From Ranitomeya imitator (taxonomy: Eukaryota): a stretch of DNA of 64,000 bases. A program made the translations under genes and the position numbers. Every line of letters starts with the position of its first letter. Within the stretch, counting starts at the first letter, position 1. The stretch spans positions 216,752,001-216,816,000 of the forward strand of contig NC_091288.1 of NCBI RefSeq assembly GCF_032444005.1, in the 5' to 3' direction. Below are positions 6,561 through 63,440 of this stretch, one piece after another. A model generated the notes under the pieces. That model had not been told where the DNA came from, did no database searches, and saw only the letters and a list, made by a program, of their open reading frames with translations.

Positions 6561-6604
<44 letters not shown>

Positions 6605-6669
6605 ACATCTCCCCCTATATACACGTATAGAGGGGGCTTTAAAGGAAGGCTTGTGATTGCAGGATGATG

Positions 6670-7170
6670 TTGGGGGCGATGTGACTGACTATGGACAATG
6701 ACAGGGGCGATGTGACTGATGATTGATTATATATAATATTGATATATAATATCGATGGTTAGCTCTCGACAGAACAGTATGGGTATATGGTGCTAGTGAG
6801 AAGGGACCATAGGCCCCGTAAATACTTACAACTGATGATTGACAGGGACGATGTGACTGATGATTGACGGGGGCGATGTGACTGACGATTGATGACTGGG
6901 GAGTTGTGACCGACGATGACGGGGGAGATGTGACCGACGATGACTGGGGGAGATGTGACCGACGATGACTGGGGGAGATGTGACTGACGATGACTGGGGG
7001 AGATGTGACCGACGATGATGGGGGAGATGTGACCGACGATGACTGGGGGAGATGTGACTGACGATGACTGGGGGAGATGTGACTGACGATGACTGGGGGA
7101 GATGTGACTGACGATGACTGGGGGAGATGTGACTGACGATTGATGATGACGGGGGCGATGTGACTGACAA
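6670..7170. repeat. 25-bp minisatellite in spns1 intron 1
   Basis: GGGGGAGATGTGACTGACGATGACT with period 25 (e.g. 7045, 7070). Confidence 0.9.
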
Positions 7171-7303
7171 TTTATGCCGGTGATGTGATCCCTCCCCCGG
7201 TTGTAGTTTGGGGGCCTTTTTTAAGCCCGATGTTCGTGTTTTCCTTTCACGATAACGACTTTGTTACTTCGTGTCCAGTGTTTCCAGTCCGGGGGCCGAC
7301 AAG

Positions 7304-7541
7304 ATGATGACCCCTCATGACCACGCTGACACCACCCCGTTCCTGACTCAGGCAGACGACGTGGACGAGGTGAACATCGCAGCGCCCCCTCCACGTGTCC
7401 TGGGTGAGGATGGCGACGACGACCCCGACACCCGCGATGTGCACTCCCTGACGGGGATCTCCTACAGGCGCTCCGTCACCATCGTGGGGATTCTCTTCTA
7501 CATCAACCTGCTGAACTACATGGATCGCTTCACTGTGGCCG
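7304..7541 (+). CDS. spns1: spns1 coding exon 1 (MMTPH...RFTVAG)
   Basis: ATG 7304; donor GTAGGT 7542. Confidence 0.93.
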
Positions 7542-22658: not shown

Positions 22659-24227
22659 ATGGCGTCTGCTGAGCTGAGGGACAAGCTGAACTGCTCCATC
22701 TGCCTGAGCCTCTATACAGACCCCGTATCCCTGAGATGTGGACACAACTTCTGCCGCTCGTGTATTGTGAGTGCGCTGGATACACAGGAGGCGGCTGGAG
22801 GGTATTCCTGTCCTGACTGCAGAGCAGAATATCCGGAGCGTCCGGCCCTGGAGAAGAACCGGAAGCTGAGGAACATAGTGGAGCGTTTCTCATCTACTCA
22901 GCCTGATATGGAGAAGACCAGAATCTTCTGTACTTACTGTACAAGGTCTCCTGTACCGGCTGTGAAATCCTGTCTGCAGTGTGAGACCTCCATGTGTGAG
23001 AAACATCTCACAGCCCATAACAAGTTGGTGAATCACAATCTAATTGAACCAACACTGTCGTTTAAGGGACAAAAATGCTCCACACACAATGAGATCCTGA
23101 AATATTACTGTCCTATAGACGTCGCCTGTATCTGTGTGTCCTGCTGGGTGGCCGGAGAACACAGGGGACATTACGTGGAGCTACTGGATGAGGCCTCTGA
23201 GAAGAAGAAGGAGAAACTGATGAAATATGTGGATAATCTAAACCCACAAAAAAAAAAATTTTTGACAAAAGTCCAGAATCTGAAGGATCATAAGAGGAAG
23301 ATCCAGGAGAAAGCCTCCGAGAAGAGGAAGAACATCAGTAAGATAATCATGGACATTAAGAAGCAACTGGAAATGGCAGAAATGAAAGCGCTGAGTGAGG
23401 TCTCCAGGCAGGAGGAGAAGATTGTGTCCCAGATATCTCATCTGATCATGAAGCTGGAAATACAGGAGGACGAGCTGTCCAGGAAGATGCGTCACGTGGA
23501 GGAGATGTGTCGTGTCACCGACCCAATAAGACTCTTACAAGAAAGTGACATTACAGTGTGTAGTCATGGAGGTGATGAGGACACAGGAGGAGATGGTGGA
23601 GAGGTCAGTACTGAGGAGGATCTGGATGAGGTTCTGATCTCACTGACCTTACACCGATCTATGAGGGATATTGTCACCAATGTAACATCAGAGCTCGGGG
23701 TCCATGTCCCAGACATATTGCTGGATGTGGGCACTGCTCATAGATGTGTGAAGATATCAGAAGATCTGAAAACGGCAACAGATTTAGAAGAAGAACAGGA
23801 GAAACGAAAATCACGAGGAAGATTTGTGGATTACTCCCAGGTGTTAAGCAGATGTGGCCTCTCCTCAGGACGACATTACTGGGAGGTAGAGTGGGATCAG
23901 ATAGGTGTATGTGCCATCGGATTGTCCTATCGCAGTATGGCTAGGAAAGGAGATAAGTCTGGTATTGGATATAATGATAAATCTTGGAGTTTGGATATGT
24001 ATGATGGAGGATATAAAGCATGGCACAAGTCTGATGAACTAGCCCTCAGTGTAAAGCCAACATGTCCGACACTTGGGGTCTTCTTAGACTATGAGGCCGG
24101 GCGTCTGTCCTTCTATGAGCTGTGTGACCCCATCAGACACTTACACACCTTCACCGCCTCCTTCACTAAACCCCTACATGTTATCTTCTATGTCAATGAT
24201 GGAGCCTCTGTTACAATAAGAAGCTGA
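22659..24227 (+). CDS. Intronless TRIM E3 ligase (RING-Bbox1-Bbox2-CC-PRY/SPRY; TRIM25/finTRIM-like), copy 1, 522 aa
   Basis: C3HC4 RING CSIC..CGHNFCRSC..CPDC; B-box1 CTYC..CLQC..C..H..H; B-box2 CSTH..C..C..C..H..H; PRY/SPRY LLDVGTAH, GRHYWEVEW, LGVFLDYEAGRLSFY; single ORF. Confidence 0.96.
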   Translation: MASAELRDKLNCSICLSLYTDPVSLRCGHNFCRSCIVSALDTQEAAGGYSCPDCRAEYPERPALEKNRKLRNIVERFSSTQPDMEKTRIFCTYCTRSPVPAVKSCLQCETSMCEKHLTAHNKLVNHNLIEPTLSFKGQKCSTHNEILKYYCPIDVACICVSCWVAGEHRGHYVELLDEASEKKKEKLMKYVDNLNPQKKKFLTKVQNLKDHKRKIQEKASEKRKNISKIIMDIKKQLEMAEMKALSEVSRQEEKIVSQISHLIMKLEIQEDELSRKMRHVEEMCRVTDPIRLLQESDITVCSHGGDEDTGGDGGEVSTEEDLDEVLISLTLHRSMRDIVTNVTSELGVHVPDILLDVGTAHRCVKISEDLKTATDLEEEQEKRKSRGRFVDYSQVLSRCGLSSGRHYWEVEWDQIGVCAIGLSYRSMARKGDKSGIGYNDKSWSLDMYDGGYKAWHKSDELALSVKPTCPTLGVFLDYEAGRLSFYELCDPIRHLHTFTASFTKPLHVIFYVNDGASVTIRS

Positions 24228-26071: not shown

Positions 26072-26379
26072 TAGTGATGAGCGAATATACTCGTTACTTG
26101 AGATTTCCCAGCATGCTCGGGGGTCCTCTGAGTATTTTTAGTGCTCGGAGATTTAGTTTTCATCGCCGCAGCTGAATGATTTACAGCTACTAGACAGCTT
26201 GATTACATGTGGGGATTCCTTAGCAACCAGGCAACCCCCACATGTACTTATGCTGGCTAGTTGCTGTAAATCATTCAGCTGCGGCAAGAAAAACTAAATC
26301 GCTGAGCACTACATAATACTCCGAGGACCCCAGAGCGTGCTGGGAAATCTGGAGTAACGAGTATATTCTCTCATCACTA
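26072..26379. mobile_element. hAT-type MITE
   Basis: TIR TAGTGATGAGCGAATATACTCG; 8-bp TSD GTCCCCAT/GTCGCCAT. Confidence 0.85.
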
Positions 26380-26439
26380 GTCGCCATCCTAGTCACCTTC
26401 ATATAGCAATGTTCCTATACTTGTTATATTCATGTAGTA

Positions 26440-28330
26440 ATGTCCCCATCCTGATCACCTTCTTGTAGCAATGTCCCCATCCTGATCACCTTCTTGTAGC
26501 AATGTCCCCATCCTGGTCACCTTCTTGTAGCACTGTCCCCATCCTGGTCACCTTCTTGTAGCACTGTCCCCATCCTGATCACCTTCTTGTAGCAATGTCC
26601 CCATCCTGGTCACCTTCTTGTAGCACTGTCCCCATCCTGGTCACCTTCTTATAGCACTGTCCCCATCCTGGTCACCTTCTTGTAGCACTGTCCCCATCCT
26701 GGTCACCTTCTTGTAGCAATGTCCTCATCCTGATCACCTTCTTGTAGCAATGTCCCCATCCTGGTCACCTTCTTGTAGCACTGTTCCCATCCTGATCACC
26801 TTCTTGTAGCACTGTCCCCATCCTGCTCACCTTCTTGTAGCAATGTCCCCATCCTGGTCACCTTCTTGTAGCACTGTCCCCATCCTGGTCACCTTCTTGT
26901 AGCACTGTCCCCATCCTGGTCACCTTCTTGTAGCACTGTCCCCATCCTGGTCACCTTCTTGTAGCACTGTCCCCATCCTGGTCACCTTCTTGTAGCACTG
27001 TCCCCATCCTGGTCACCTTCTAGTAGCACTGTCCCCATCCTGGTCACCTTCTTGTAGCACTGTCCCCATCCTGGTCACCTTCTTGTAGCAATGTCCCCAT
27101 CCTGGTCACCTTCTTGTAGCACTGTCCCCATCCTGGTCACCTTCTTGTAGCACTGTCCCCATCCTGGTCACCTTCTTGTAGCACTGTTCCCATCCTGGTC
27201 ACCTTCTTGTAGCAATGTCCCCATCCTGGTCACCTTCTTGTAGCAATGTCCCCATCCTGATCACCTTCTTGTAGCAATGTCCCCATCCTGGTCACCTTCT
27301 TGTAGTAATGTCCCCATCCTGGTCACCTTCTTGTAGCACTGTCCCCATCCTGGTCACCTTCTTGTAGCACTGTCCCCATCCTGGTCACCTTCTTGTAGCA
27401 CTGTCCCCATCCTGGTCACCTTCTTATAGCACTGTCCCCATCCTGGTCACCTTCTTGTAGCACTGTCCCCATCCTGGTCACCTTCTTGTAGCAATGTCCT
27501 CATCCTGATCACCTTCTTGTAGCACTGTCCCCATCCTGGTCACCTTCTTGTAGCACTGTTCCCATCCTGATCACCTTCTTGTAGCACTGTCCCCATCCTG
27601 CTCACCTTCTTGTAGCAATGTCCCCATCCTGGTCACCTTCTTGTAGCACTGTCCCCATCCTGGTCACCTTCTTGTAGCACTGTCCCCATCCTGGTCACCT
27701 TCTTGTAGCACTGTCCCCATCCTGGTCACCTTCTTGTAGCACTGTCCCCATCCTGGTCACCTTCTTGTAGCAATGTCCTCATCCTGATCACCTTCTTGTA
27801 GCAATGTCCCCATCCTGGTCACCTTCTTGTAGCACTGTTCCCATCCTGATCACCTTCTTGTAGCACTGTCCCCATCCTGCTCACCTTCTTGTAGCAATGT
27901 CCCCATCCTGGTCACCTTCTTGTAGCAATGTCCCCATCCTGGTCACCTTCTTGTAGCACTGTCCCCATCCTGGTCACCTTCTGATAGCACTGTCCCCATC
28001 CTGGTCACCTTCTTGTAGCACTGTCCCCATCCTGGTCACCTTCTTATAGCACTGTCCCCATCCTGGTCACCTTCTTGTAGCACTGTCCCCATCCTGGTCA
28101 CCTTCTTGTAGCACTGTCCCCATCCTGCTCACCTTCTTGTAGCACTGTCCTCATCCTGGTCACCTTCTTGTAGCAATGTCCTTTATCCTGGTCACCTTCT
28201 TGTAGCACTGTCCCCATCCTGGTCACCTTCTTGTAGCACTGTCCCCATCCTGGTCACCTTCTTGTAGCACTGTCCCCATCCTGGTCACCTTCTTGTAGCA
28301 CTGTCCCCATCCTGGTCACCTTTTTGTAGC
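26440..28330. repeat. 31-bp minisatellite (~60 units)
   Basis: GTAGCACTGTCCCCATCCTGGTCACCTTCTT. Confidence 0.97.
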
Positions 28331-29354
28331 AAATGCCCCCAATGTTGCCGGTATTCACATACATATAAAAAAATATATAAAAGAGAATTCTTCTCACCTG
28401 ACCCCTCTCCCTCGGCACACAATGTCCTCGTCTCCTCCACAGCAGTGCAGTCATACGCTGCCCGTGCCGGCGTGCCACAGTCAGATGTGGGCCTCTGATT
28501 GGCCGGTGGCTGGTATTGGTATCATGGTGAGAGATGGTCTCTGTGCCACAATACATTTCAGTTAAATCAGACAAAGCGCTTGGGTCGGCGGCCCCTGGAC
28601 CGGGCCACGATCCTCGCGGAGAGCTCTGGTGCTTGCGGGCCACATGATCCATCCTCAGGGGCCGCACGCGTCCCACGTGTTTTAGACCTTTGCACTAAAC
28701 CATCAGTAAACAGATTGCCCAGGGGAAAAATTATCAGAGAAGACCAACGTAAAGGCATGAAGGCGGAATCCACCGCTCCGGACAGGAGAAAGGCGCCTTG
28801 GAGGCAACATGGAGGCCACGATCTGTCCTGGGCTCTTCCCGGAATGACTCATGGTGGATGTAGTAAGCTTTAAGAATTTAGCAAATTTCATAGTTTTGAA
28901 GAAACACTTTGCATTCTTGAAGCTTTGGATTCTCATGGAGAGGACGCTGTTGGTTTGGTTCCCACGTTCTTGCAGTGTGGTGGGTGAGACCTCAGTTTTG
29001 TGTAAACGTAGGATTCTTTAAGGGAATTATGCGGCACACGGACACAATTCCTGGTGACCCTACACACACGATGCCAGCAGGGGCGGATTAAGAGTAGTCA
29101 AGAAGGCGTGGACCCCCAAGGTACCAGATACCCCACATGACATGTCACATGATCCCCTTTGATAGATCATGTGAGTAACACACAGGTGCTCTGCTGCAGA
29201 TGGAACATGACAAATAGCGGCGCGCGTAGCACACTGTGCTATACAGCGCTATACATAATAGAGCAGGGGTGGGAGATTAATTTTCCCAAGGGACCACATG
29301 GCAGACCGTGACTACTCTGGAGTCCAGACCAATAGGCTGAAATTAATTCTGCTC

Positions 29355-33552: not shown

Positions 33553-35116
33553 ATGGCGTCTGCTGAGCTGAGGGACGAGCTGAACTGCTCCATCTGCCTG
33601 AGCCTCTATACAGATCCCGTATCCCTGAGATGTGGACACAACTTCTGCCGCTCGTGTATTGTGAGTGTGCTGGATGCACAGGAGGCGGCTGGAGGGTATT
33701 CCTGTCCTGACTGCAGAGCAGAATATCCGGAGCGTCCGGACCTGGAGAAGAACCAGAAGCTGAGGAACATAGTGGAGCGTTTCTCATCTACTTATCCTGA
33801 TATGGAGGAGACCAGAATCTTCTGTACTTACTGTACAAGGTCTCCTGTACCGGCTGTGAAATCCTGTCTGCAGTGTGAGACCTCTCTATGTGACGACCAC
33901 CTGACAGCCCACAATAAGACAGTGGATCATTTATTAGTGGAACCCACCGGCTTTTTTGGCAACAAAAGATGCTTCCTCCACAAGAAGGTTCTGGAGTATT
34001 ACTGCCCGCAGGACGCGGCTTGTCTGTGTGTGTCTTGCTGTCTCTTTGGCGAACACCGAGGACACCAGGTGGAATATCTGCATAAAGCTTCTGAGAAGAA
34101 GAAGAAGAAACTGAAAAAATATCTGGATGAACTAAACCCACAAAAAGCAGATATTCAGACAAGAGTCCACAATCTGCAGGATCATAAGAGGAAGATCCAA
34201 GAGAAAGCCTCCGATAAGAGGAAGAACATCAGTAAGATAATTATGAACATTAAAACGCAACTGGAAATGGCAGAAAAGAAAGCGCTGAGCGAGGTCTCCA
34301 GGCAGGAGGAGAAGATTGTGTCGCAGATATCTGATCTGATCAAGAAGCTGGAAATACAGGAGGACGAGCTGTCCAGGAAGATGCATCACGTGGAGGAGAT
34401 GTGTCGTGTCACCGACCCAATAAGACTCTTACAAGAAAGTGACATTACAGTGTGTAGTCATGGAGGTGATGAGGACACAGGAGGAGATGGTGGAGAGGTC
34501 AGTTCTGAGGAGGATCTGGATGAGGTTCTGATCTCACTGACCTTACACCGATCTATGAGGGATATTGTCACCAATGTAACATCAGAGCTCGGGGTCCATG
34601 TCCCAGACATATTGCTGGATGTGGACACTGCTCATAGATGTGTGAAGATATCAGAAGATCTGAAAACGGCAACAAGATCAGGAAAGACCAGAATGTCATC
34701 GAAGATTTCTGACTTACTCCCAGGTATTAAGCAGATGTGGCCTCTCCTCAGGACGACATTACTGGGAGGTAAAGTGGGACCAGATAGGAAGATGTATCAT
34801 CGGATTGTCCTATCCCAGTATAGAAAGGGAAGGAGATGAATCTGGAATTTTATTTAATGATAAATCTTGGTGTTTGGATGTGTATGATGCTGTACGTCAA
34901 GTACTTCATAAATCATTCAGCCTAATCCTCAAAGTACAACCGAAGTGCTCAACACTTGGAGTCTTCTTAGACTATGAGGCCGGGCGTCTGTCCTTCTATG
35001 AGCTGTGTGACCCCATCAGACACTTACACACCTTCACCGCCTCCTTCACTGAACCCCTACATGTTATCTTCTATGTGGAGGATGGAGCCTCTGTTAGAAT
35101 ATTAAATGGAGTTTAA
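33553..35116 (+). pseudogene. TRIM copy 2, frameshifted at the start of PRY/SPRY (428-aa truncated ORF; SPRY intact in the shifted frame)
   Basis: ACG GCA ACA A GAT CAG at 34666-34681 versus GCA ACA GAA TCA GAA GAT CAG in copy 3, i.e. an apparent 8-nt deletion. The frame from 34676 is open to the stop at 35116 and encodes GRHYWEV...DYEAGRLSFY. Confidence 0.88.
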
Positions 35117-37178: not shown

Positions 37179-38404
37179 CTCTAGATGAATAATAAAAAAA
37201 CAGCAATTCTGTAATTGTTTTTTTTGTTGCTATATTGAACGACCTCCACCCCACCCACCTTTAAAAAAACAAACAAAAAAAAACCCTACACCACAAAATT
37301 TCTTTATGGCCAGGTTCACACAGCTGTACTAAATCTCAGACCGGTCACCTCCACAAATCGCGGATGTAACTGGCTCCGTGTGCAGCTCCGCGTTCTCAAC
37401 TACGTGGCGGACAATTGCTCCCTGCTATTTACATGCGTCAGTATATCAGACCAAGAGTGTATAATTACTGACCAGCTCCTGATATAGGGATAGGAACACC
37501 AGCATCCACCTTAGACACCCAAAGTGCGTTTCGCCGCAGGCTTTGTCTGAGGGTACAGAGGTGAAGATTGTGAGTAAAGATGGAATATTCCACATACGAA
37601 GCGGCACCATTTTGCAAAAGGATAAAGCTAATAGATGGAGCTGGGCGAGTGCTGTATAACAGGAAAGTAATTGTACACTGTTTAAAGCAAGAGCCACTGA
37701 CTGCAGTGCCCCCTTCCCCAACCCCCGAGGTAGTGTGCGATTCAGAGGCCTCCCTCCCCCTCTGTTAAGGATAAGTGTTTGCCAATTATAGCCAGAGGGG
37801 CTAGTACCTTGCAATGTGACCTTTATAGACAGAGGGACTAGTACCTTTCATTGTGGCCAGTTATAGTCAGAGGAGCTAGTACAGCCCCTTTCTTGTGGTT
37901 TAAAAAGCCCCCTGCGTGCCAGTCATTTCCTGTTCCTTTTTGGGTCCCGGATGTGCTTTCGTCCCACCCTCACTACCTTTTTTGTGCATTTTTTTAATAA
38001 ATATTATTTCATTGTAAAAATTCAAGGTTGTTTCAGTTAAAGAAAGGAAGCACTGGGACGTTTCGATCACGTAGGCCGACTTGCCTGTTGACATGCTGGA
38101 GGGCATTTGGCTGTTAGTCTTGTGTTTTCATTGCCTTCCTCTTATTGTTATACTATATATGTTACAGTAAAGCTGTGACCGACCTTCATCCATCCACTGG
38201 TGCGTGTGCCCTTATTTGTTATACAGGGTATTGGAGGGAGGGGAGGCGCCTGGTGTTATCATATTGGGGTCGCTGCGGTCAGCCATACTGAAGAAATGTA
38301 TGGGAAGATGACACAGTAACAGATAGATGGTTATCCAAGAAGTATTGTTTCTCCTTGCGGAGATGAGGAGACTTAAAGCTGCAATGCTCCTCTGGGTAAT
38401 ATGC

Positions 38405-38692
38405 TAATTATGCAAATTGTCTCTTTGTAGAGGAAGAGACTTGTCACATGACTTAGGGTAATAGCCAAACCAGAATCTCACACAGCCAAACCAGATCTCC
38501 GCTTTGCACTGACGAGGGGCAGTACCCCGAAACACAGTGTCTGCAAATTGAGATTCTGGCTTGGCTATTATCCTAAGTCATGTGACAAGGCTCGTTAAAG
38601 GGTCGACATTGACTTGTAGGATTGCTACCTTCCAATAGGTGGCACTAGAGTTCTAGCTCTCTTCCTTCCTGAAGAGACAATTTGCATAATTA
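38405..38692 (+). mobile_element. ~290-nt rod-like palindromic element with an apical hammerhead (retrozyme/Penelope-derived candidate)
   Basis: Nested inverted repeats: 20 bp perfect (38405-38424/38673-38692), 18 bp perfect (38440-38457/38572-38589) and 23 bp with 2 mismatches (38458-38480/38549-38571). Confidence 0.7.
38503..38547 (+). ncRNA. Type I hammerhead ribozyme, complete catalytic core
   Basis: TTTGCA-CTGACGA-GGGG-CAGTA-CCCC-GAA-ACAC-A-GTGT-C-TGCAAA; GUC triplet 38539-38541; helix I is extendable. Confidence 0.85.
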
Positions 38693-38714
38693 ACAGATAG
38701 ATGACAATGGGTAA

Positions 38715-39454
38715 AGGTACCTTCACACTGAACAACTTAACAACGATATCGCTAACGATCCGTGACGTTGCAGCGTCCTGGCTAGCGATATCGTTGTGTT
38801 TGACACCCAGCAGCGATCTGGATCCTGCTGTGACATCGCTGGTCGGAGCAGAAAGGCCAGAACTTTATTTCGTCGCTGGATCTCCCGCAGACATCGCTGA
38901 ATCGGCGTGTGTGACGCCAATTCAGCGATGTCTTCACTGGTAACCAGGGTAAACATCGGGTTACTAAACGCAGGGCCGCGCTTAGTAACCCGATGTTTAC
39001 CCTGGTTACCAGTATAAATGTAAAAAAAAAAAACACGACATACTTACATTCCGGTGTCTGTCGCGTCCCCCGGCGTTCTGCTTCCCTGCACTGACTGTGA
39101 GCGCCGGCCGGCCGTAAAGCACAGCGGTGACGTCACCGCTCTGCTTTACGGCTGGCGCTTACACAGTGCAGGGAAGCAGAACGCCGGGGGACGCGACAGA
39201 CACCGGAATGTAAGTATGTAGTGTTTTTTTACATTTACACTGGTAACCAGGGTAAACATCGGGTTACTAAGCACGGCCCTGCGCTTAGTAACCCGATGTT
39301 TACCCTGGTTACCCAGGGACTTCGGCATTGTTGGTCGCTGGAGAGCTGTCTGTGTGACAGCTCTCCAGCGACCACACAACGACGAAACAGTGACGCTGCA
39401 GCGATCGGCATCGTTGTCTAGATCGCTGCAGCGTCGCTATATGTGACGGTACCT
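38715..39454. mobile_element. PIF/Harbinger-type palindromic non-autonomous element
   Basis: TIR AGGTACC.TCACA; TAA/TTA flanks; two internal ~35-bp-stem hairpins; relatives at 45139, 57981 and 59453. Confidence 0.8.
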
Positions 39455-39934
39455 TTAGCCCTACAAAGAAAGACTAATAACAACAGAACAATCAACTGGA
39501 CCAAAGGCCAAAAGTGACATTTGTGAAAACCAAGTGACTGCACACATTTAAAGTTCAAGGTGGAGAAGTGTCAGATTTAAGAAAACAAAATAAATTTGGA
39601 AAGAGACGAGTTGGTGAAACACGAAAATAAAAAATACAGATTATATAGAAAAAACAAAATCTGCAAAGTGTTGATGTGGAGGGAGTGTTTTTTTTTTTTC
39701 CTGTCAATAGCATTGTATGAGGGTTCGTTTTATGCAGCTGTAGTTTTCATTGGTGCCATTTACGGTTACATATGTTTTTTTGGGACACTTTTTATTCCTT
39801 CTTTAGAGAGGCATGTAGACTATAAAACGCCGATTCTGCTGTAGTCTTTTTTTTGTGATGATCAGTGGGCAGGAGAAAAATATACTAAATTTATCATTTG
39901 GGTCTTCACGGATGTAGCAAAACGAGGATCACAA

Positions 39935-41140: not shown

Positions 41141-42700
41141 ATGGCGTCTGCTGAGCTGAGGGACGAGCTGAACTGCTCCATCTGCCTGAGCCTCTATACA
41201 GATCCCGTATCCCTGAGATGTGGACACAACTTCTGCCGCTCGTGTATTGCGAGTGTACTGGATGCACAGGAGGCGGCTGGAGGGTATTCCTGTCCTGACT
41301 GCAGAGCAGAATATCCGGAGCGTCCGACCCTGGAGAAGAACCGAAAGCTGAGGAACATAGTGGAGCGTTTCTCATCTACTCAGCCTGATATGGAGAAGAC
41401 CAGAATCTTCTGTACTTACTGTACAAAGTCTCCTGTACCGGCTGTAAGGACATGTCTGCAGTGTGAGACCTCCATGTGTGAGGAACATCTCGCAGCCCAT
41501 AACAAGTCGATGAATCACAATCTAATTGAACCTACCCTGACATTTAAGGGTCAAAAATGCTCCACACACAATGAGATCCTGAAATACCACTGCACTATAG
41601 ACGTCGCCTGTATCTGCGAGTCCTGCTGGGTGGCCGGAGATCACAAGGGACATGACGTGGAGCTACTGGACATGGCTTCAGAGAAAACAAAGGAGAAACT
41701 GGAGAAATTTTTGGATGATCTAAACCCACAAAAAACAAAAATTCAAACGAGAGTCTTGAATCTGCAGGAAATTAAGAGGAAGATCCAGGAGAAAGCCTCT
41801 GATAAGAGGAAGAACATCAGTAAGAGATTTATGGATTTTAAGGAGCAATTGGAAATAGCAGAAAAGAAAGCATTGAGCGAGGTCTCCAGGCAGGAGGAGA
41901 AGATTGTGTCCCAGATATCTCATGTGATCAAGAAGCTGGAAATACAGGAGGACGAGCTGTCCAGGAAGACGAGTCACGTGGAGGAGATGTGTCATGTCAC
42001 CGAGCAAATAAGACTAGAAAGTGACATTACAGTGTGTAGCCATGGAGGTGATGAGGACACAGGAGGAGATGGTGGAGAGCTCAGTACTGAGGAGGATCTG
42101 GATGAGGTTCTGATCTCACTGACCTTACACCGATCTATGAGGGATATTGTCACCAATGTAACCTCAGAGCTCGGGGTCCATGTCCCAGACATATTGCTGG
42201 ATGTGGGCACTGCTCATAGAAGGGTGAAGATATCAGAAGATTTGAAAACGGCAACAGAATCAGAAGATCAGGATAAACCAGAATCACCAGGAAGATTTGT
42301 GACATTTTCCCAGGTGTTAAGTAGACCTGGTTTCTCCTCAGGGCGAAATTACTGGGAGGTAGAGTGGGACCAGATAGGAATATGTGGCATCGCATTGTCC
42401 TATTCCAGTATAGAAAGGGATGGAGGACAGTCTGGTATTGTATATAATGATAAATCTTGGTCTTTGTACATGTATGATGGTCAATATGGAGTATATCACA
42501 ACTCCATAGGATTAATGCTCAGTGTAAAGCCAACAAGTCCGACACTTGGATTCTTCTTAGACTATGAGGCCGGGCGTCTGTCCTTCTATGAGCTGTGTGA
42601 CCCCATCAGACACTTACACACCTTCACCGCCTCCTTCACTGAACCCCTACACGTTGTCTTCCATTTGTATGATGGAGCCTCTGTTACAATAAGAAGCTGA
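41141..42700 (+). CDS. Intronless TRIM E3 ligase (RING-Bbox1-Bbox2-CC-PRY/SPRY), copy 3, 519 aa
   Basis: Same domain motifs as copy 1; in-frame small deletions (lacks LQ in IRLLQES; shorter PRY loop). Confidence 0.96.
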   Translation: MASAELRDELNCSICLSLYTDPVSLRCGHNFCRSCIASVLDAQEAAGGYSCPDCRAEYPERPTLEKNRKLRNIVERFSSTQPDMEKTRIFCTYCTKSPVPAVRTCLQCETSMCEEHLAAHNKSMNHNLIEPTLTFKGQKCSTHNEILKYHCTIDVACICESCWVAGDHKGHDVELLDMASEKTKEKLEKFLDDLNPQKTKIQTRVLNLQEIKRKIQEKASDKRKNISKRFMDFKEQLEIAEKKALSEVSRQEEKIVSQISHVIKKLEIQEDELSRKTSHVEEMCHVTEQIRLESDITVCSHGGDEDTGGDGGELSTEEDLDEVLISLTLHRSMRDIVTNVTSELGVHVPDILLDVGTAHRRVKISEDLKTATESEDQDKPESPGRFVTFSQVLSRPGFSSGRNYWEVEWDQIGICGIALSYSSIERDGGQSGIVYNDKSWSLYMYDGQYGVYHNSIGLMLSVKPTSPTLGFFLDYEAGRLSFYELCDPIRHLHTFTASFTEPLHVVFHLYDGASVTIRS

Positions 42701-45138: not shown

Positions 45139-45869
45139 AGGTACCTTCACACATAACGATATCATTAACGATATCGTTGCTTTTTGTGACGTAGCAACGA
45201 TATCGTTAAGGAAATCGTTATGTGTGACCAACGATCAGGCCCCTGCTGGAAGATCGTTGGTCGCTGAGGAAAGTCCAGAACTTTATTTTGTCGCTGGATC
45301 TCCCGCTGACATCGCTGGATCGGCGTGTGTGACGCCGATCCAGCGATGTCTTCACTGGTAACCAGGGTAAACATCGGGTTACTAAGCGCAGGGCCGCGCT
45401 TAGTAACCCGATGTTTACCCTGGTTACCAGCGTAAACGTTAAAAAAACAAGCACTACATACTTACCTTCAGCTGTCTGTCCCCGGCGCTCTGCTTCTTTG
45501 CACTCCTCCTGCATCCTGTGTCAGCTCCGGCCAGCCGGAAAGCAGAGCGGTGACGTCACCGCTCTGCTTTCCTGCTGACCGGCGCTGACAGTGCAGAGGA
45601 AAGCAGAGCGCCGGAGGACAGACAGCGGAAGGTAAGTATGTAGTGTTTGTTTTTTTAATGTTTACGCTGGTAACCATGGTAAACATCGGGTTACTAAGCG
45701 CGGCCCTGCGCTTAGTAACCCGATGTTTACCCTGGTTACCGGGGACCTCGGGATCGTTGGTCGCTGGAGAGCTGTCTGTGTGACAGCTCTCCAGCGACCA
45801 AACAGCGACGCTGCAGCGATCGACATCGTTGTCGGTATTGCTGCAGCGTCGCTTAGAGTGAAGGTACCT
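45139..45869. mobile_element. PIF/Harbinger-type palindromic element
   Basis: AGGTACCTTCAC...GTGAAGGTACCT; perfect 35-bp-stem hairpin 45355-45430. Confidence 0.8.
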
Positions 45870-46316
45870 TTAGTATTATTTATTGCGGCCTGTACAGACC
45901 ACAAGATCTAGAGACTAAATGGCGCACTCGTCCCTCAAGCGTTTTCCACTTATGAGGGAGTAAAGATTTCACAGTTATAAAGTTCACCTATCGTTCAATC
46001 CTTTCACGATGCAAGTTCATCGGTCCAAGATCTCTCAGTAGGTTTAGCGAGTGCCATAAGGACCTGCAGCTCAGAGGCGTAGCTAGGGTTTTGGTTCAGG
46101 GGGGGCAAAGCTTCTGAGTAGCCCCTAACCAGGTAACCTTGATTACAACTCGGTGACACACCCTAATAGTGGAGGAGAACCTCAGCAGATGACCGCACTG
46201 TTACTGAAGATAATTTCTATATAAAGACCAATATTGATATTAACGCTATACGGTCAGTGGTAGATACCAGTCCTACAAAACATAGAGATCACAGCAAGGT
46301 TACAGATAATGACTTA

Positions 46317-54075: not shown

Positions 54076-55690
54076 TAATGAGGAGGCAGCGGGGTCAGTG
54101 CAGGCTGTAGGCTTTCCTGAAGAGATGGGTTTTCAGCTTCCGTCTGAAGGATCCGAATGTGGTTGATAGTCGGACGTGTTGGGGCAAAAAATTCCAGAGG
54201 ATGGGGGATATTCGGGAGAAGTCTTGGAGGCGGTTGGATGAGGAGCGAATAAGTGTGGAGGAGAGAAGGAGGTCTTGGGAGGACCGGAGATTACGTGAGG
54301 GAAGATATCGGGAGATTAGTTCAGAGATATATGGAGGAGACAGGTTGTGGATGGCTTTGTATGTCAGTATTAGTAATGTGAACTGGATACGCTGAGGGAA
54401 TGGGAGCCAGTGAAGAGATTTGCAGAGGGGGGAAGCAGAGGAGTAGCGAGGAGAGAGACGAATTAGTCGGGCAGCAGAGTTAAGGATGGACTGGAGAGGT
54501 GCAAGGGTGTTAGCAGGGAGGCCACAGAGGAGGATGTTGCAGTAGTCAAGGCGGGAGATGATGAGGGCATGCACAAGTATTTTAGTAGATTGACGGTTGA
54601 GGAAAGGATGGATTCTGGAGATATTTTTGAGCTGGAGGCGACAGGAGGTGGCAAGAGCTTAGATGTGCGGATGAAGGACAGGGCAGAGTCGAAGGTAACT
54701 CCGAGGCAGCGGACTTCTGGTACGGGGGAAGGCGTGATGTCGTTAATAGTGATAGATAGGTCAGGTAAGGAAGATCTATGAGATGGAGGAAACATGATGA
54801 GCTCAGATTTGTCCACATTGAGTTTGAGGAAGCGAGAGGAGAAGAAAGAGGATATTGCTGATAGACACTCTGGGATTCTGGACAGCAGGGAGGTGACGTC
54901 CGGGCCAGAAAGGTAGACCTGAGTGTCATCGGCATAAATGTTGTACTGGAATCCAAGAGACTTTATGAGTTGTCCCAGGCCAAGTGTATAGATTGAGAAG
55001 AGTAGGGGTCCTAGAACAGAGCCTTGGGGGACTCCAACAGAGAGAGGGTGGGATGAGGAGGTAGTGTGGGAGTGGGAGACGCTGAATGTGCGGTTGGAAA
55101 GGTATGAGGGGATCCAGGATAGGGCGAGGTCTTTGATGCCAAAGGAGGAAAGGATCTGTAGTAGGAGACAGTGGTTAACTGTGTCAAAAGCAGAGGACAG
55201 GTCTAGGAGGAGAAGTACAGAGTATTGTCCGTTAGCTTTGGCTGTAAGTAGGGCGTTAGTGATTTTGGTCAGGGCTGCCTCAGTTGAGTGATGGGGGCGG
55301 AAACCAGATTGTAGATTGTCAAAGAGCAAGTTAGATGAGAGGTGGGAGGAAAGTTCAGCTTAGACATGCTGCTCCAGGAGTTTGGAAGCGAATGGGAGCA
55401 GCGATATTGGGCGATAGCTGGACATAGCAGTTGGATCGAGGGTTGGCTTTTTAAGGGTAGGTGTGATTGTGGCATGTTTGAAAGCAGAAGGGAAGGTGCC
55501 AGAAGTTAGTGATAGGTTGAAGAGGTGGGTTAGGGATGGGATAAGTGCGGTGGTGAGGTTGGGGAGGAGGTGGGATGGGATGGGGTTGAGCGCACAGGTG
55601 GTGAGGTGCGATTTGGAGAGGAGACAATTAAACCCCCCTTCAGTGATCTTGGAGAGGGAGGTTATAGGGTTTATGCATTGTATAATAGGT
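54076..55690 (-). mobile_element. L2 LINE with reverse-transcriptase domain (frameshifted)
   Basis: [41 protein letters not shown]; upstream YRPISLLPF motif. Confidence 0.93.
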
Positions 55691-55694
55691 TCCA

Positions 55695-56065
55695 TGTGAG
55701 ATGCATCAGCCCACCGGCTGCGCCCCTGGGCAGAGGGGACACGATATTCCCCTTTTGTCCTCTCCCCACCTTTGTAATTCCCACAGTAAATATCGGCAGG
55801 CTCCGGCCCCCTGCGCCTATTGTAATGTATGTCTGGCCTGCCCCTTTTCTATTGGCCTGCCCTCTGTATCTGTGTGATATATTCTGTGTCCTGTGAGTAA
55901 AGTGTTGTCAGACTGGAAATACGTGGAGAAGCTTTTATATGCGCCCATGTATCCAAGCAATTCCAGCCAGCGTCCTTCATTCAGACTCAAGCCAAAGCAA
56001 AGTGGACCTCCTGAAACACGGGGTGGTACTGAAAGAGGTACCCCAGCTTGGTAAACCCCGTTACA
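55695..56065 (+). mobile_element. Possible short LTR or LTR fragment
   Basis: TG...TTACA ends with CCAAT-like and AGTAAA motifs; no TSD found. Confidence 0.35.
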
Positions 56066-56069
56066 AGGG

Positions 56070-56830
56070 ATGTGTATACCAGAATGGGGGATGGGGGATG
56101 TGTATACCAGGATGGGGCATGTATATACCAGGATGGGGCATGTATATACCAGGATGGGGCGTGTATATACCAGGATGGGGGATGTATATACCAGGATGGG
56201 GGATGTATATATCAGGACGGGAGATGTGTATACCAGGATGGGGGATGTATATATCAGGACGGGGGATGTATATACCAGGACGGGGCATGTATATATCAGG
56301 ATGGGGGATGTATATACCAGGATGGGGCATGTATATATCAGGATGGGGGATGTATATACCAGGATGGGGGATGTATATACCAGGATGGGGCATGTATATA
56401 TCAGGATGGGGGATGTATATACCAGGATGGGGGATATATATACGATGGGGGACGTATATACCAGGATGGGGGATGTATATACCAGGATGGGGGATGTATA
56501 TACCAGGATGGGGGATGTATATACCAGGATGGGGGATGTATATACCAGGATGGGGCATGTATATATCAGGATGGGGGATGTATATACCAGGATGGGGGAC
56601 GTATATACCAGGATGGGGGACGTATATACCAGGATGGGGGACGTATATACCAGGATGGTGGATGTATATACTAGGATGGGGGACGTATATACCAGGATGG
56701 GGGATGTATATACCAGGATGGGGGACGTATATACCAGGATGGGGGACGTATATACCAGGATGGGGGACGTATATACCAGGATGGGGGATGTATATACCAG
56801 GATGGAAGACAAATATACCAGGATGGGGCA
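56070..56830. repeat. 21-bp VNTR (~36 units)
   Basis: GGATGGGGGATGTATATACCA; ORFs repeat every 7 aa. Confidence 0.96.
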
Positions 56831-57084
56831 TGTATTTTTAGCAATATTTCAACAGTATTTCTGTGAAAAAATCAGGAGCGTCTCCATAACGCAGAACAGG
56901 TGTCAATACTTCAATTACCGTTTTTCTCTGTAAGTTCCACTCCTGGTTTTGGCATAGAAAATACTGATGAAATACTGAACATGTGAACGTGACCTTATAG
57001 ATAGGAGAAGCTTTGCAATTATTTGAGAAAATCACCAATAAGAACTGGCACAGTCCAAGCACTGATGAAAATCGGAACAAAACC

Positions 57085-57980: not shown

Positions 57981-58672
57981 GGGTACCGTTACACTATCCG
58001 ATTTACCAACGATCACGACCAGCGATACGACCTGGCCGTGATCGTTGGTAAGTCGTTGTGTGGTCGCTGGAGAGCTGTCACACAGACAGCTCTCCAGCGA
58101 CCAACGATGCCGAGGTCCCCGGTAACCAGGGTAAAAGTAAAAAAAACAAACACTACATACTTACCTACCGCTGTCTGTCCCCGGCGCTCTGCTTCTCTGC
58201 ACTCCTCCTGCACTGGCTGTGAGCGTCGGTCAGCCGGAAAGCAGAGCGATGACGTCACCGCTCTGCTTTCCGGCCGCTGTGCTCACAGCCAGTACAGGAG
58301 GAGTGCAGAGAAGCAGAGCGCCGGGGACAGACAGCGGTAGGTAAGTATGTAGTGTTTGTTTTTTTTACTTTTACGCTGGTAACCAGGGTAAACATCGGGT
58401 TACTAAGCGCGACCCTGCACTTAGTAACCCGATGTTTACCCTGGTTACAAGCGAACGCATCGCTGGATCGGTGTCACACACACCGATCCAGCGATGACAG
58501 CGGGAGATCCAGCGACGAAAGAATGTTCCAAACGATCTGCTACGACGTACGATTCTCAGCAGGGTCCCTGATCGCTGCTGCGTGTCAGACACAGCGATAT
58601 CGTATGGATATCGCTGGAACGTCACGAATCGTACCGTCGTAGCGACAAAAGTGCCACTGTGAGACGGTACCC
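57981..58672. mobile_element. PIF/Harbinger-type element
   Basis: GGGTACCG...CGGTACCC; TAA/TAA TSD. Confidence 0.82.
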
Positions 58673-59188: not shown

Positions 59189-59452
59189 TAAGTGTGGATC
59201 AGCAGTGAGCACAACCATGGAACAGAAAGGGTTAATTATCCTGCACCGACTTTCCCGCCCTTTTTATGTAAAGAAACTCTTTCCCTTTCAGTTCCTGCTC
59301 ATTCCATCTAGTGATGGGCAGTCCGGCTCTTTTTGGTGATCTGGCTCTTTTGGCTCGCGAACCGGATCTTTTTCTAAATAAATATGCGTTTTCCACAGTC
59401 CTCGCTTCGGGTCTTTGCCTGTAGAGTGAGGCCTCATTATACACCTGTATAA

Positions 59453-59760
59453 AGGCCCCTTCACATTAAGCGACGCTGCAGCGATACCGACAACGATCCG
59501 GATCGCTGCAGCGTCGCTGTTTGGTCGCTGGAGAGCTGTCACACAGACCGCTCTCCAGCGACCAACGATGCCGGTAACCAGGGTAAACATTGGGTAACTA
59601 AGCGCAGGGCCGCGCTTAGTAACCCAATGTTTACCCTGGTTACCATCCTAAAAGTAAAGAAAAACAAACACTACATACTTACCTACCGCTGTCTGTCCTC
59701 CAGCGCTGTGCTCTGCACTCCTCCTGCACTGGCTGTGAGCACAGCGGCCGGAAAGCAGAG
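59453..59760. mobile_element. Truncated PIF/Harbinger-type element
   Basis: TAA-AGGCCCCTTCACA left end and the same internal hairpin as 45139-45869; right end missing. Confidence 0.7.
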
Positions 59761-59823
59761 CCTTCCTTTTTGTGTTGTTGTATTGACACATGCGCGAACG
59801 ACTGAGCTATTTATGACAAACCC

Positions 59824-61769: not shown

Positions 61770-61871
61770 CAATCTCTGAACTGCAGGGGTTAATAGTTTA
61801 TTATCAGAAACCTCCGCCCTTTATACGTAAGGATACATTTCATCTTTCGTTTCATGCTCTTTTGTACTACA
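61770..61871 (+). promoter_or_regulatory. Proximal promoter of TRIM copy 4 (GC box plus ISRE-like motif)
   Basis: CCGCCC ~61814; TTTCATCTTTCGTTTCA 61838-61854. Confidence 0.6.
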
Positions 61872-63440
61872 ATGGCGTCTGCTGAGCTGAGGGACGAGCT
61901 GAACTGCTCCATCTGCCTGAGCCTCTATACAGATCCCGTATCCCTGAGATGTGGACACAACTTCTGCCGCTCGTGTATTGTGAGTGTGCTGGATGCACAG
62001 GAGGCGGCTGGAGGGTATTCCTGTCCTGACTGCAGAGCAGAATATCCGGAGTGTCCGGCCCTGGAGAAGAACCGAAAGCTGAGGAACATAGTGGAGCGTT
62101 TCTCATCTACTCAGCCTGATATGGAGGAGACCACAATCTTCTGTACTTACTGTACAAAGTCTCCTGTACCGGCTGTAAGGACATGTCTGCAGTGTGAGAC
62201 CTCCATGTGTGAGAAACATCTCACAGCCCATAACAAGTCAGTGAATCACAATCTAACTGAACCAACACTGTCATTTAAGGGACAAAAATGCTCCACACAC
62301 AAAGAGATCCTGAAATATTACTGCCCTAAAGACGCCACCTGTATCTGTGTGTCCTGCTGGGTGGCTGGAGACCACAAGGGACATGACGTGGAGCTACTGG
62401 ATGTGGCTTCTGAGAAGAAGAAAGAGAAACTGAGGAAATATTTTGATGATCTAAAGCCACAAAATATAAAAACTCAGAAAAGAGTCCAGAATCTACAAGA
62501 TCATAAGGTGAAGATCCAGGAGAAAGCTTCTCATAAGAGGAAGAACATCAGTAAGATGTTTATGAACATTAAGAAGAAACTGGAAATGGCAGAAAAGAAG
62601 GTGCTGAGCGAGGTCTCCAGGCAGGAGGAGAAGATTGTGTCCCAGATATCTCATCTGATCAAGAAGCTGGAAATACAGGAGGGCGAGCTGTCCAGGAAGA
62701 TGCGTCACGTGGAGGAGATGTGTCGTGTCACCGACCCAATAAGACTCTTACAAGAACGTGACATTACAGTGTGTAGTTATGGAGGTGATGAGGACACAGG
62801 GGGAGATGGTGGAGAGGTCAGTACTGAGGAGGATCTGGATGAGGTTCTGATCTCACTGACCTTACACCGATCTATGAGGGATATTGTCACCAATATAACA
62901 TCAGAGCTTGGGTTCCATATCCCAGACATATTGCTGGATGTGGACACTGCTAATGATTTTGTGAAGGTATCAGAAGATCTGAAAACAGCAACAGATTTAG
63001 AAGACGAACAGGAGAAAACAGAATCATCAGGAAGATTTGTGGATTACTCCCAGGTGTTAAGCAGATGTGGTCTCACCTCAGGACGACATTACTGGGAGGT
63101 AGAGTGGGACCAGATAGGTGTATGTGGCATCGGATTGTCCTATCCCAGTATAGAAAGGGAAGGTGGACAGTCTGATATTGGAAATAATGATAAATCTTGG
63201 TGTTTGTTTATGTGTGATGGAGGATATAATGTATATCACAACTTTGTTAGATTAACGTTTAGTGTAAAGCCAACATGTCCAACACTTGGAGTCTACTTAG
63301 ACTATGAGGCCGGGCGTCTGTCCTTCTATGAGCTGTGTGACCCCATTAGACACTTACACACCTTCACCGCCTCCTTCACTGAACCCCTACATGTTGTCTT
63401 CTATGTGAATGATGGGGCCTCTGTTACAATAAGAAGCTGA
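61872..63440 (+). CDS. Intronless TRIM E3 ligase (RING-Bbox1-Bbox2-CC-PRY/SPRY), copy 4, 522 aa
   Basis: Homologous ATG (MASAEL) at 61872; all domain motifs intact; an extra in-frame ATG lies at 61854. Confidence 0.96.
   Translation: MASAELRDELNCSICLSLYTDPVSLRCGHNFCRSCIVSVLDAQEAAGGYSCPDCRAEYPECPALEKNRKLRNIVERFSSTQPDMEETTIFCTYCTKSPVPAVRTCLQCETSMCEKHLTAHNKSVNHNLTEPTLSFKGQKCSTHKEILKYYCPKDATCICVSCWVAGDHKGHDVELLDVASEKKKEKLRKYFDDLKPQNIKTQKRVQNLQDHKVKIQEKASHKRKNISKMFMNIKKKLEMAEKKVLSEVSRQEEKIVSQISHLIKKLEIQEGELSRKMRHVEEMCRVTDPIRLLQERDITVCSYGGDEDTGGDGGEVSTEEDLDEVLISLTLHRSMRDIVTNITSELGFHIPDILLDVDTANDFVKVSEDLKTATDLEDEQEKTESSGRFVDYSQVLSRCGLTSGRHYWEVEWDQIGVCGIGLSYPSIEREGGQSDIGNNDKSWCLFMCDGGYNVYHNFVRLTFSVKPTCPTLGVYLDYEAGRLSFYELCDPIRHLHTFTASFTEPLHVVFYVNDGASVTIRS

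What the first reader, a model, noticed from the sequence alone, without database searches (positions are those of the whole stretch)
38405..38692. Intact type I hammerhead ribozyme at the apex of a ~290-nt rod-like palindrome (retrozyme/viroid-like candidate)
Seen: 38503-38547 reads TTTGCA-CTGACGA-GGGG(CAGTA)CCCC-GAA-ACAC(A)GTGT-C-TGCAAA. Every conserved core position (CUGANGA, GAAA, GUC) is present, with a 6-bp helix I, a 4-bp helix II and a near-palindromic helix III. Helix I continues past a small internal loop (AGCCAAACCAGATCTC / GAGATTCTGGCTTGGCT), and further nested inverted repeats of 23, 18 and 20 bp close a long rod. Established: metazoan non-LTR retrozymes (e.g. newt satellite 2) and Penelope-like elements carry type I hammerheads; palindromic helix III allows dimeric cleavage; tandem copies can release circular RNAs. 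Inference: this is a copy of a small non-coding self-cleaving mobile RNA family, much better formed than the minimal hammerheads elsewhere in the window. It sits between TRIM copies 2 and 3, where a long dsRNA rod could also matter for innate sensing.
Basis: partly seen in the sequence, partly recalled or inferred. Interest (0 to 1): 0.85.

Follow-up and report, generated by a model that had tools for sequence, protein, structure and literature searches.

The report
Solo fold-back hammerhead retrozyme insertion
This is a real hammerhead self-cleaving RNA motif, but it lies in one dead-end 361-base copy of a very abundant frog mobile repeat of an already described kind, and its long hairpin is mostly a scar of how the copy was pasted in, not a viroid-like RNA shape.

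Summary
The motif is there as described. 38503-38547 (+) matches Rfam Hammerhead_1 over the whole model, at 25.5 bits, which is below the gathering score of 34. It is the only hammerhead-like site in the 64 kb.

It lies in a 361-bp insertion (38330-38690) flanked by an exact 13-bp target duplication. Contigs of two frog species pile up by thousands exactly between those ends, so it is one copy of a very high-copy family. Within the family the ribozyme is the best-kept part. One helix II pair (38519/38525) changes G-C to C-G together in all four runs laid.

The 290-nt "rod" is not the family's RNA shape. In other copies the outer left segment has the opposite orientation and directly precedes 38476. 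The left 150 bp are therefore an inverted, 5'-truncated partial copy joined to a direct copy through a 5-nt microhomology. This is the complex insertion form known for Penelope-like elements.

There is one ribozyme and no tandem partner, so this copy cannot release a unit-length or circular RNA.

The scan has noted this before on other DNA of the same genome: 521 hammerhead notes, 49 of them palindromes. Verdict: an ordinary member of the amphibian non-LTR retrozymes. Its junctions give modest information about how such copies are inserted.

The parts
38317..38329 (.). Left copy of the 13-bp target-site duplication TAACAGATAGATG
   Evidence: Exact direct repeat with 38691-38703. About 0.006 such repeats are expected by chance in 901 nt. 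Family depth starts right after it, and an organism B contig stops at 38329.
38330..38690 (+). The whole insertion: 361 bp, 44% GC, no ORF longer than 57 codons
   Evidence: Contig depth rises from 0-5 to 26,000-163,000 at about 38332. In X2 it falls to 11 after about 38695.
38330..38398 (-). Outer part of the inverted segment (S). In other copies it lies in the opposite orientation, directly upstream of 38476.
   Evidence: Joint 38330->38476 on opposite strands with no letters between: 12 contigs in X1 and 1 in X2. X1 record 1 covers 38476-38590 and has 52 more letters. The 39 letters between in another contig hold the reverse complement of the start of S (table 5c).
38399..38480 (-). Inner part of the inverted segment (L). 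It is the reverse complement of 38549-38590 and 38659-38690, without the 68 nt in between.
   Evidence: In X1 its depth is 2,000-10,000, against 340,000-1,200,000 over the direct arm.
38476..38480 (.). Inversion joint: TCTCA is shared by the end of the inverted arm and the start of the direct segment (5-nt microhomology)
   Evidence: Sequence. Alignments of other copies to the + strand start at 38476 (tables 5 and 8).
38476..38690 (+). Direct segment: pre-ribozyme strand, the hammerhead, and the 3' part of the unit
   Evidence: Contigs of X1, X2 and X15 run collinearly from 38476 or 38502 to 38628-38694 (table 8).
38484..38499 (+). 5' strand of the extended helix I. It pairs with 38549-38566 beyond a CGC/UU internal loop.
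   Evidence: Constrained fold. Other copies keep both strands: consensus AGCCAAATCAGATCTC upstream and GGAGTTTCTGGTTTGGCT downstream (table 7).
38503..38547 (+). Type I hammerhead. Helix I is 38503-08/38542-47. The core CUGACGA is 38509-15. Helix II is 38516-19/38525-28 with loop CAGUA. GAA is 38529-31. Helix III is 38532-34/38538-40. C17 is 38541.
   Evidence: Rfam RF00163, 25.5 bits, full model. Descriptor scans. This copy equals the family majority at every listed position, and 38519/38525 covary.
38541..38542 (+). Predicted self-cleavage site, after C38541
   Evidence: Position of C17 in the Rfam alignment. This is an inference: no read pile-up was seen there in polyA RNA of organism B (table 6).
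38549..38593 (+). R1: 3' strand of the extended helix I plus downstream sequence. It is the partner of the inverted arm 38436-38480.
38591..38658 (+). 68-nt stretch of the direct arm that has no counterpart in the inverted arm
   Evidence: Global alignment. Other copies carry deletions here: joints 38559->38629 and 38555->38595.
38659..38690 (+). R2: end of the direct segment and partner of 38408-38439. The insertion ends here, inside the unit.
   Evidence: The expected continuation TAGCATAT (reverse complement of 38399-38406) resembles the target TAACAGAT at 6 of 8 positions.
38691..38703 (.). Right copy of the 13-bp target-site duplication

Best explanation
38330-38690 is one solo, non-coding copy of a very abundant hammerhead-bearing repeat of poison frogs. 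The family is of the amphibian non-LTR retrozyme / Penelope pLTR kind, and the copy was inserted by target-primed reverse transcription with a 13-bp target duplication. It has two pieces in head-to-head orientation. The first is an inverted, 5'-truncated partial unit (38330-38480). The second is a direct partial unit (38476-38690) that holds the only hammerhead. The pieces are joined through 5 nt of microhomology. Shown: the motif, the duplication, the family's copy number and ends, conservation of the ribozyme, and the opposite orientation of 38330-38398 in other copies. Inferred: both target strands primed cDNA synthesis on one HHR-sense RNA of at least 1.7 units. That would explain why the outer left end (38330) and the start of the direct piece (38476) are neighbours on the template. 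The inverted cDNA then ran to within 7 nt of the 5' end left by ribozyme cleavage of the upstream unit. As a transcript this copy could at most cut itself slowly after C38541. With one ribozyme, a 3-bp helix III and a more stable competing fold, it cannot release a unit-length or circular RNA. It is a dead end.
For: It is the only hit of my descriptor in 64 kb, against 0.02 expected. Insertion: an exact 13-nt duplication at 38317-29 and 38691-703, with about 0.006 expected by chance. The family depth in two species starts and stops at those ends, and the left flank is single-copy. Family constraint: inside 38503-38547 every listed variant is a minority (at most 5.5% in X1 and 19% in X2). In the rest of the insert, at 9 listed positions most copies differ from this one. 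38519 G>C and 38525 C>G occur at equal depth in all four runs. Fold-back made at the DNA level: the joint 38330->38476 on opposite strands is seen in 12 contigs of X1 and 1 of X2. The left arm has low depth. Both strands fold equally well. Known precedent: PLE insertions often carry an inverted 5'-truncated copy next to the direct one (PMC8557442). A purified PLE protein cleaves and extends both target strands and starts reverse transcription inside the template (PMC11167929). Retrozyme traits: 44% GC, no ORF and a TSD longer than 4 bp (PMC7229834). Solo monomers are common in frogs (bioRxiv 10.64898/2026.07.22.740005). Weak monomer: the HHR-constrained fold is 4.6-6.2 kcal/mol above the MFE.
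Against: The Rfam score is below the gathering cut-off. I could not fetch any full sequence of another copy, so family structure rests on contig tables (short contigs, at least 85% alike, 43 variant rows and 87 joints not shown). The covariation is a single event. The two arms differ at about 10% of positions and by a 68-nt gap, so they are not two copies of one identical stretch. The inverted arm ends 7 nt from the cut site, not on it. No tandem array of this family was seen directly. No Penelope ORF lies in the window. PolyA RNA of a related species shows neither ends at the cut site nor circle joints.
Confidence: 0.7

Rival explanations
1. The roughly 290-nt rod is the native secondary structure of a viroid-like or retrozyme RNA unit, with the hammerhead at its apex, and it is kept by selection on the RNA.
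For: Very stable fold, z = -14.8. Retrozyme circles are known to be highly self-paired (PMC7229834). In organism B the depth over the left arm is only about 5 times below the core.
Against: The minus strand folds just as well. The mismatches give one G.U on each strand, so neither strand is favoured. In organism A the left arm has about 100 times less depth than the core. Other copies carry 38330-38398 inverted and directly before 38476.
Confidence: 0.1
2. The copy is a fragment of the pseudo-LTR of an autonomous Penelope-like element, not of a separate non-autonomous retrozyme family.
For: pLTRs carry type I hammerheads with a palindromic helix III. Frog retrozyme families are sister to pLTRs. 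The inverted-plus-direct insertion form is the PLE signature.
Against: No RT or GIY-YIG ORF adjoins it. The only RT fragment is 16 kb away and looks LINE-like (RVT_1, 104 bits). The hammerhead has a full 4-bp helix II with a loop and a long interrupted helix I, unlike the minimal PLE variants described in PMC7229834. The very high depth confined to about 300 bp fits a short repeat.
Confidence: 0.15
3. It is a miniature inverted-repeat DNA transposon (MITE or foldback element) in which a hammerhead-like string arose by chance.
For: 40-nt terminal inverted repeats. A true MITE lies next door at 38712-39495.
Against: The family extends 69 nt beyond the left inverted repeat. The 13-bp duplication flanks 38330/38690, not the inverted repeats. 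The ribozyme is the most conserved part and shows a compensatory pair. The chance expectation of the motif is about 0.02 per window even for a relaxed descriptor.
Confidence: 0.03
4. The inverted arm arose after insertion, or by snap-back of the nascent cDNA on itself, rather than by priming on both target strands.
For: 5-nt microhomology at the joint. The arms share a derived state at 38567/38462 against the family majority.
Against: Snap-back copying would run from the direct arm's end into target DNA. Instead the inverted arm continues into family sequence (38330-38398) that the direct arm lacks. The 13-bp duplication encloses both arms.
Confidence: 0.07

Closest known systems
Amphibian non-LTR retrozymes (axolotl Rtz331/Rtz353, newt satellite 2, Xenopus families)
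   Same: A type I hammerhead with a weak helix III that is expected to work as a dimer. The unit is non-coding, about 300 nt and low in GC. Copy number is very high and TSDs exceed 4 bp. Solo monomers are scattered between genes (PMC7229834; bioRxiv 10.64898/2026.07.22.740005).
   Different: This locus is not a tandem array. It holds one ribozyme and an extra inverted partial unit. No RNA circles or cleavage ends were shown for this family here.
Penelope-like element insertions (pLTR with hammerhead; inverted 5'-truncated copy next to the direct copy)
   Same: Head-to-head inverted and direct pieces inside one TSD. The 3' end lies inside the unit rather than at a fixed terminus. The hammerhead has a palindromic helix III (PMC8557442; PMC11167929).
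   Different: There is no RT / GIY-YIG ORF, the total is only 361 bp, and the hammerhead is canonical rather than minimal.
Twin-priming inversions of human L1
   Same: The 5' part is inverted relative to the 3' part. The joint shows microhomology. The outer end of the inverted part and the start of the direct part are neighbours on the template RNA.
   Different: The enzyme family differs (GIY-YIG PLE, not APE-type L1) and there is no poly(A). The template must be multimeric or circular, because the two pieces overlap in sequence.

Membership tests
Hammerhead ribozyme, type I (Rfam RF00163) | Core C3-A9 CUGANGA, G12-A14 GAA, the A15.1-U16.1 pair and H17, with three helices and helix I open | tested here: met
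   All core positions are present, with helices of 6, 4 and 3 bp.
Hammerhead ribozyme, type I (Rfam RF00163) | Score at or above the curated gathering threshold (34 bits) | tested here: not met
   25.5 bits, E 1e-4 in a 95-nt search. No hit at gathering.
Hammerhead ribozyme, type I (Rfam RF00163) | Site-specific self-cleavage | not testable with these tools
   PolyA RNA of a related species shows no ends at 38541|38542. That is not informative for a non-polyadenylated RNA.
Hammerhead ribozyme, type I (Rfam RF00163) | Conservation and covariation across copies beyond the flanks | tested here: met
   The core is unchanged among the listed variants. 38519/38525 change G-C to C-G at equal depth in 4 runs. 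The flanks hold 9 listed positions where the family majority differs from this copy. Caveats: this is one covariation event, and 43 rows are hidden.
Metazoan non-LTR retrozyme | Tandem repeats of 170-400 bp, each unit with a type I hammerhead | tested here: not met
   At this locus there is no tandem array and only one motif. For the family the result is inconclusive. Joints show unit-to-unit continuity (38330->38476) and a few 'goes back' joints (38686->38483, 38653->38538).
Metazoan non-LTR retrozyme | Non-coding, low GC, TSD longer than 4 bp | tested here: met
   44% GC, longest stop-free stretch 57 codons, 13-bp TSD.
Metazoan non-LTR retrozyme | Expressed as linear and circular unit-length RNAs | tested here: inconclusive
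   Contig sets guessed to be RNA hold 21-31% of the words in 4 organisms. PolyA reads come from embedded fragments, with no circle joints.
Penelope-like element pLTR | Flanks an ORF with a telomerase-like RT and a GIY-YIG endonuclease | tested here: not met
   No such ORF lies within the window. The only RT fragment is at 54463-55329, 16 kb away.
Penelope-like element pLTR | Complex tandem/inverted insertion with an inverted 5'-truncated copy | tested here: met
   Inverted 38330-38480 plus direct 38476-38690 inside one TSD.
MITE / foldback DNA transposon | Family ends at the terminal inverted repeats, with the TSD directly outside them | tested here: not met
   The family and the TSD extend 69 nt beyond the left inverted repeat.

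The most novel reading that the evidence does not exclude
The locus is a natural fossil of a Penelope-type integration in which both target strands primed cDNA synthesis on one partly self-cleaved, multimeric retrozyme RNA. The inverted cDNA ran off near the 5' end made by the hammerhead, and the two cDNA ends joined by microhomology. If the many hammerhead palindromes noted in this genome show the same geometry, they would give in vivo evidence for two things: double-strand priming by PLE enzymes, and ribozyme cleavage of the template before integration.
Probability: 0.4. Interest if true: 0.45.

Novelty: new member of a known kind. Interest (0 to 1): 0.27.

Why it matters
The copy itself is ordinary. 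Hammerhead retrozymes are described in amphibians and abound in this genome, and this one is a solo dead end. Its value is as a clean, TSD-bounded example whose junctions can be read. The insertion mechanism of Penelope-like elements and their retrozyme dependants is still largely unknown. A survey of such fold-back copies could test in vivo the double-strand cleavage and internal initiation that have so far been seen only in vitro. It is also a caution for scans. A long perfect-looking 'rod' around a ribozyme can be an insertion scar rather than an RNA structure, and Rfam's default filters and threshold miss these vertebrate hammerheads.

Tried and rejected
- The Rfam search at gathering threshold on the whole window, and the E-value search on 341 nt, gave no hammerhead. 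Only the 95-nt search did. The weak miRNA and Xist hits reflect the hairpin only.
- Relaxed descriptor scans for further hammerheads in the window found none.
- A search for a second copy or a paralogous empty site in the window found none. The flank to the right is another repeat.
- To fetch family copies I scanned metagenome contigs twice and viral contigs once with conserved patterns, with 0 hits. The findings index searched by sequence was blank. No multiple alignment, covariance model or R-scape-type test could therefore be made.
- The RNA evidence was uninformative. PolyA raw reads of organism B showed no pile-up of ends at the cut site and no circle joint. The reads are 85-95% alike, 93% run on into unlike sequence, and they come from a few transcripts with embedded fragments.
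- Homodimer cofolding did not pick the intermolecular helix III.
- MITE reading: rejected (see rivals).
- Delta-virus-like or viroid-like agent: rejected, because of the very high DNA copy number and the TSD.
- The RT fragment at 54.4-55.3 kb as a Penelope partner is not supported.

Full report
**1. Observation**

- Helix I is UUUGCA/UGCAAA and the core is CUGACGA.
- Helix II is GGGG/CCCC with loop CAGUA, followed by GAA.
- Helix III is ACA/UGU around CAG. Read as a dimer, it is the palindrome ACACAGUGU.
- C17 is at 38541.

Rfam at its gathering threshold reports nothing in the window. A 341-nt search also loses the motif to the filters. When only 95 nt are given, RF00163 Hammerhead_1 aligns to exactly 38503-38547 (+) over the full model, at 25.5 bits and E 1e-4. 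That is below the curated 34 bits. The Rfam consensus has the same loop-less palindromic helix III.

My own descriptor finds this site only, on either strand of the 64 kb. Shuffles give 0.02 hits for the relaxed version and 0 for the strict one.

The inverted repeats are real: 45-nt arms at 93% and 41-nt arms at 83%. The fold is -146 kcal/mol with z = -14.8.

**2. Limits of the element**

An exact 13-nt direct repeat, TAACAGATAGATG, lies at 38317-38329 and 38691-38703. About 0.006 such repeats are expected by chance in the 901 nt searched.

I laid contigs of two frog DNA runs on 38150-38900. X1 matches the unique flank exactly and is probably the source species. X2 is a relative.
- In X1 the summed depth is 0 just left of the repeat and 163,000 from about 38332.
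- In X2 the depth is about 5 on the left and 26,000 from about 38332. It falls from 119,000 to 11 after about 38695.
- One X2 contig that matches the unique left flank stops at 38329.

So 38330-38690 (361 bp) is a target-duplicated insertion of a very high-copy family. It has 44% GC and no ORF over 57 codons. It lies 3.5 kb after TRIM ORF 2 and 2.5 kb before TRIM ORF 3. Notes of this scan name the genome a poison frog and list 521 hammerhead notes in it. I did not check the species myself.

**3. Is the ribozyme under constraint?**

Within 38503-38547 every listed variant is a minority:
- 38536, the centre of helix III, varies in 5.5% of depth in X1 and 19% in X2.
- 38522, in loop 2, varies in 4.5% and 10%.
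- No listed variant touches CUGANGA, GAA or GUC.

Outside the ribozyme, the majority of copies differs from this one at 9 listed positions: 38346, 38380, 38397, 38560, 38567, 38657, 38658, 38667 and 38668.

Depth peaks over 38514-38565. The closing pair of helix II changes on both sides together. 38519 G>C and 38525 C>G have equal depth in X1 (18,876 and 19,536), in X2 (6,397 and 6,677) and in X15 (25.2 and 25.2). In the RNA reads both are 38 of 66 and 9 of 17.

This is one compensatory event, probably one subfamily. 43 variant rows were not shown, and only contigs at least 85% alike were laid.

The strands of the helix I extension are also kept in other copies. The loose-end consensus reads ...AGCCAAATCAGATCTCACA before the motif and TGCAAATGGAGTTTCTGGTTTGGCT after it. 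That gives a 6-bp helix I, an internal loop and a longer stem, the usual build of natural type I hammerheads (my own knowledge).

**4. The rod is mostly an insertion scar**

Four observations argue against an RNA-level rod.
- Both strands fold equally well: -146.1 and -149.4 kcal/mol.
- The three mismatches of the 45-nt arms give one G.U on each strand and one true mismatch, so neither strand is favoured.
- In X1 the left arm (38410-38461) has 2,000-10,000 depth, against 340,000-1,200,000 over the direct arm.
- The best-supported joint in other copies runs 38330 -> 38476 on opposite strands with nothing between: 12 contigs in X1 and 1 in X2. X1 record 1 covers 38476-38590 and has 52 further letters.

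A contig reported as a same-strand skip carries 39 letters between that contain the reverse complement of the start of 38330-38398. It therefore has the same inverted arrangement (table 5c).

In ordinary copies the order is thus 38476...38690, then roughly the reverse complement of 38408...38330, then 38476 again.

Read that way, the left 150 bp of this insert are an inverted partial unit. It comprises:
- the reverse complement of the unit's tail (38330-38398);
- the reverse complement of R2, about 38659-38690;
- the reverse complement of R1, about 38549-38590.

It lacks the 68 nt 38591-38658. It stops at the equivalent of 38549 and joins the direct piece at 38476 through the shared TCTCA.

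**5. Mechanism**

This section is inference. The geometry is the one described for Penelope-like elements. Insertions often have an inverted 5'-truncated copy immediately next to the direct one (PMC8557442). A purified Penelope-like protein of Anolis cleaves and extends both target strands and starts reverse transcription inside the template (PMC11167929).

Here the outer left end (38330) and the start of the direct piece (38476) are neighbours on the template. That is what twin priming predicts: one strand primes inside the RNA, and the other cDNA stops where the first began. Twin priming is known from L1, which I cite from my own knowledge.

The template must then have been an HHR-sense RNA of at least about 1.7 units, either multimeric or a circle.

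The inverted cDNA ends 7 nt from the predicted 5' end of a self-cleaved upstream unit. This is suggestive, but it is not on the cut site.

At the right end, the expected continuation of the unit (TAGCATAT) resembles the target (TAACAGAT) at 6 of 8 positions. This fits priming helped by microhomology.

Three points weigh against a single identical template. The arms differ at about 10% of positions. The 68-nt gap is unexplained. The family structure rests on tables of short contigs, not on full sequences.

**6. What this copy can do**

It has one hammerhead and no tandem partner.
- As a monomer, helix III has 3 bp.
- A competing pairing, GCACUG/CAGUGU, hides C3-G5.
- The ribozyme fold lies 4.6 kcal/mol above the MFE in an 83-nt context and 6.2 kcal/mol above it in the whole insert.

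Amphibian hammerheads of this build cleave poorly alone and well as dimers (PMC7229834). A read-through transcript might therefore be cut slowly after C38541. No unit-length or circular RNA can come from this locus.

PolyA RNA reads of the related species map only to 38540-38650. They are 85-95% alike and continue into unlike sequence in 93% of cases. They show no ends at the cut site and do not cover the left arm. There is thus no evidence for a dsRNA hairpin transcript or for any link to the neighbouring TRIM genes.

**7. Comparison and novelty**

The closest known kind is the amphibian non-LTR retrozymes: axolotl, newt satellite 2 and the Xenopus families. These are themselves close kin of Penelope pLTRs.

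This locus meets the motif, size, GC, TSD and copy-number features. It does not meet the tandem-array feature. Whether the family is a free retrozyme or the pLTR of an autonomous element cannot be told here, because no Penelope ORF is in the window.

Dendrobatids are not named in the main text of the vertebrate survey, so I file it as a new member of a known kind.

The scan has already noted many hammerhead arrays, solo copies and 49 hammerhead palindromes on other DNA of this genome. Those notes gave me the fold-back lead. I tested it here only for this locus.

**8. Left out**

Noticed in passing
window 38712-39495; copies at 45139-45873 (+), 58030-58660 (-), 59430-59790 (-): A MITE-like repeat of about 780 bp with terminal inverted repeats TAAAGGTACCTTCAC and large internal palindromes. 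It starts about 9 nt after the right TSD copy. Its depth is enormous in X1 (millions) and zero in X2, which points to a lineage-specific burst.
   Followed up: partly
window 38154-38329 (X2 contig record 17): A 611-nt contig of the related species matches the unique left flank at about 86% and stops exactly at the end of the left TSD copy. A further 362 nt run on unlike the window. This may be an empty site or a paralogue.
   Followed up: no
window 22659-24227, 33553-34839, 41141-42700, 61854-63440 (+): Four intronless TRIM ORFs with RING, B-box, coiled coil and PRY/SPRY. The second (428 aa) ends inside PRY and has no SPRY.
   Followed up: partly
window 54463-55329 (-): A reverse transcriptase fragment (RVT_1, 104 bits) with no GIY-YIG nearby. 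It looks like a LINE remnant rather than a Penelope element.
   Followed up: partly
window 55817-56812 (-): An ORF that hits 'HV_Gp350_C-term' lies on a tandem repeat of 21 nt x 36 (56089-56835). I read the hit as a low-complexity artefact, not a viral gene.
   Followed up: partly
window 38505-38537 (joints in other copies): Two X1 contigs of other family copies fold back on the opposite strand inside the ribozyme itself. Many other deletion and inversion joints exist in the family; 87 joints were not shown.
   Followed up: no
window 38518-38525 (RNA reads of X23): More than half of the polyA reads of the related species carry 38518A/38519C/38525G. 38518A would leave an A.C mismatch in helix II unless 38526 also changes. 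The reads seem to come from a few transcripts with embedded fragments, one of which starts near 38545.
   Followed up: no
window 2583-6560, 8304-9806, 26375-28331: Long minisatellite arrays: 30 nt x 132, 34 nt x 43 and 31 nt x 63. They produce spurious long ORFs on both strands.
   Followed up: no
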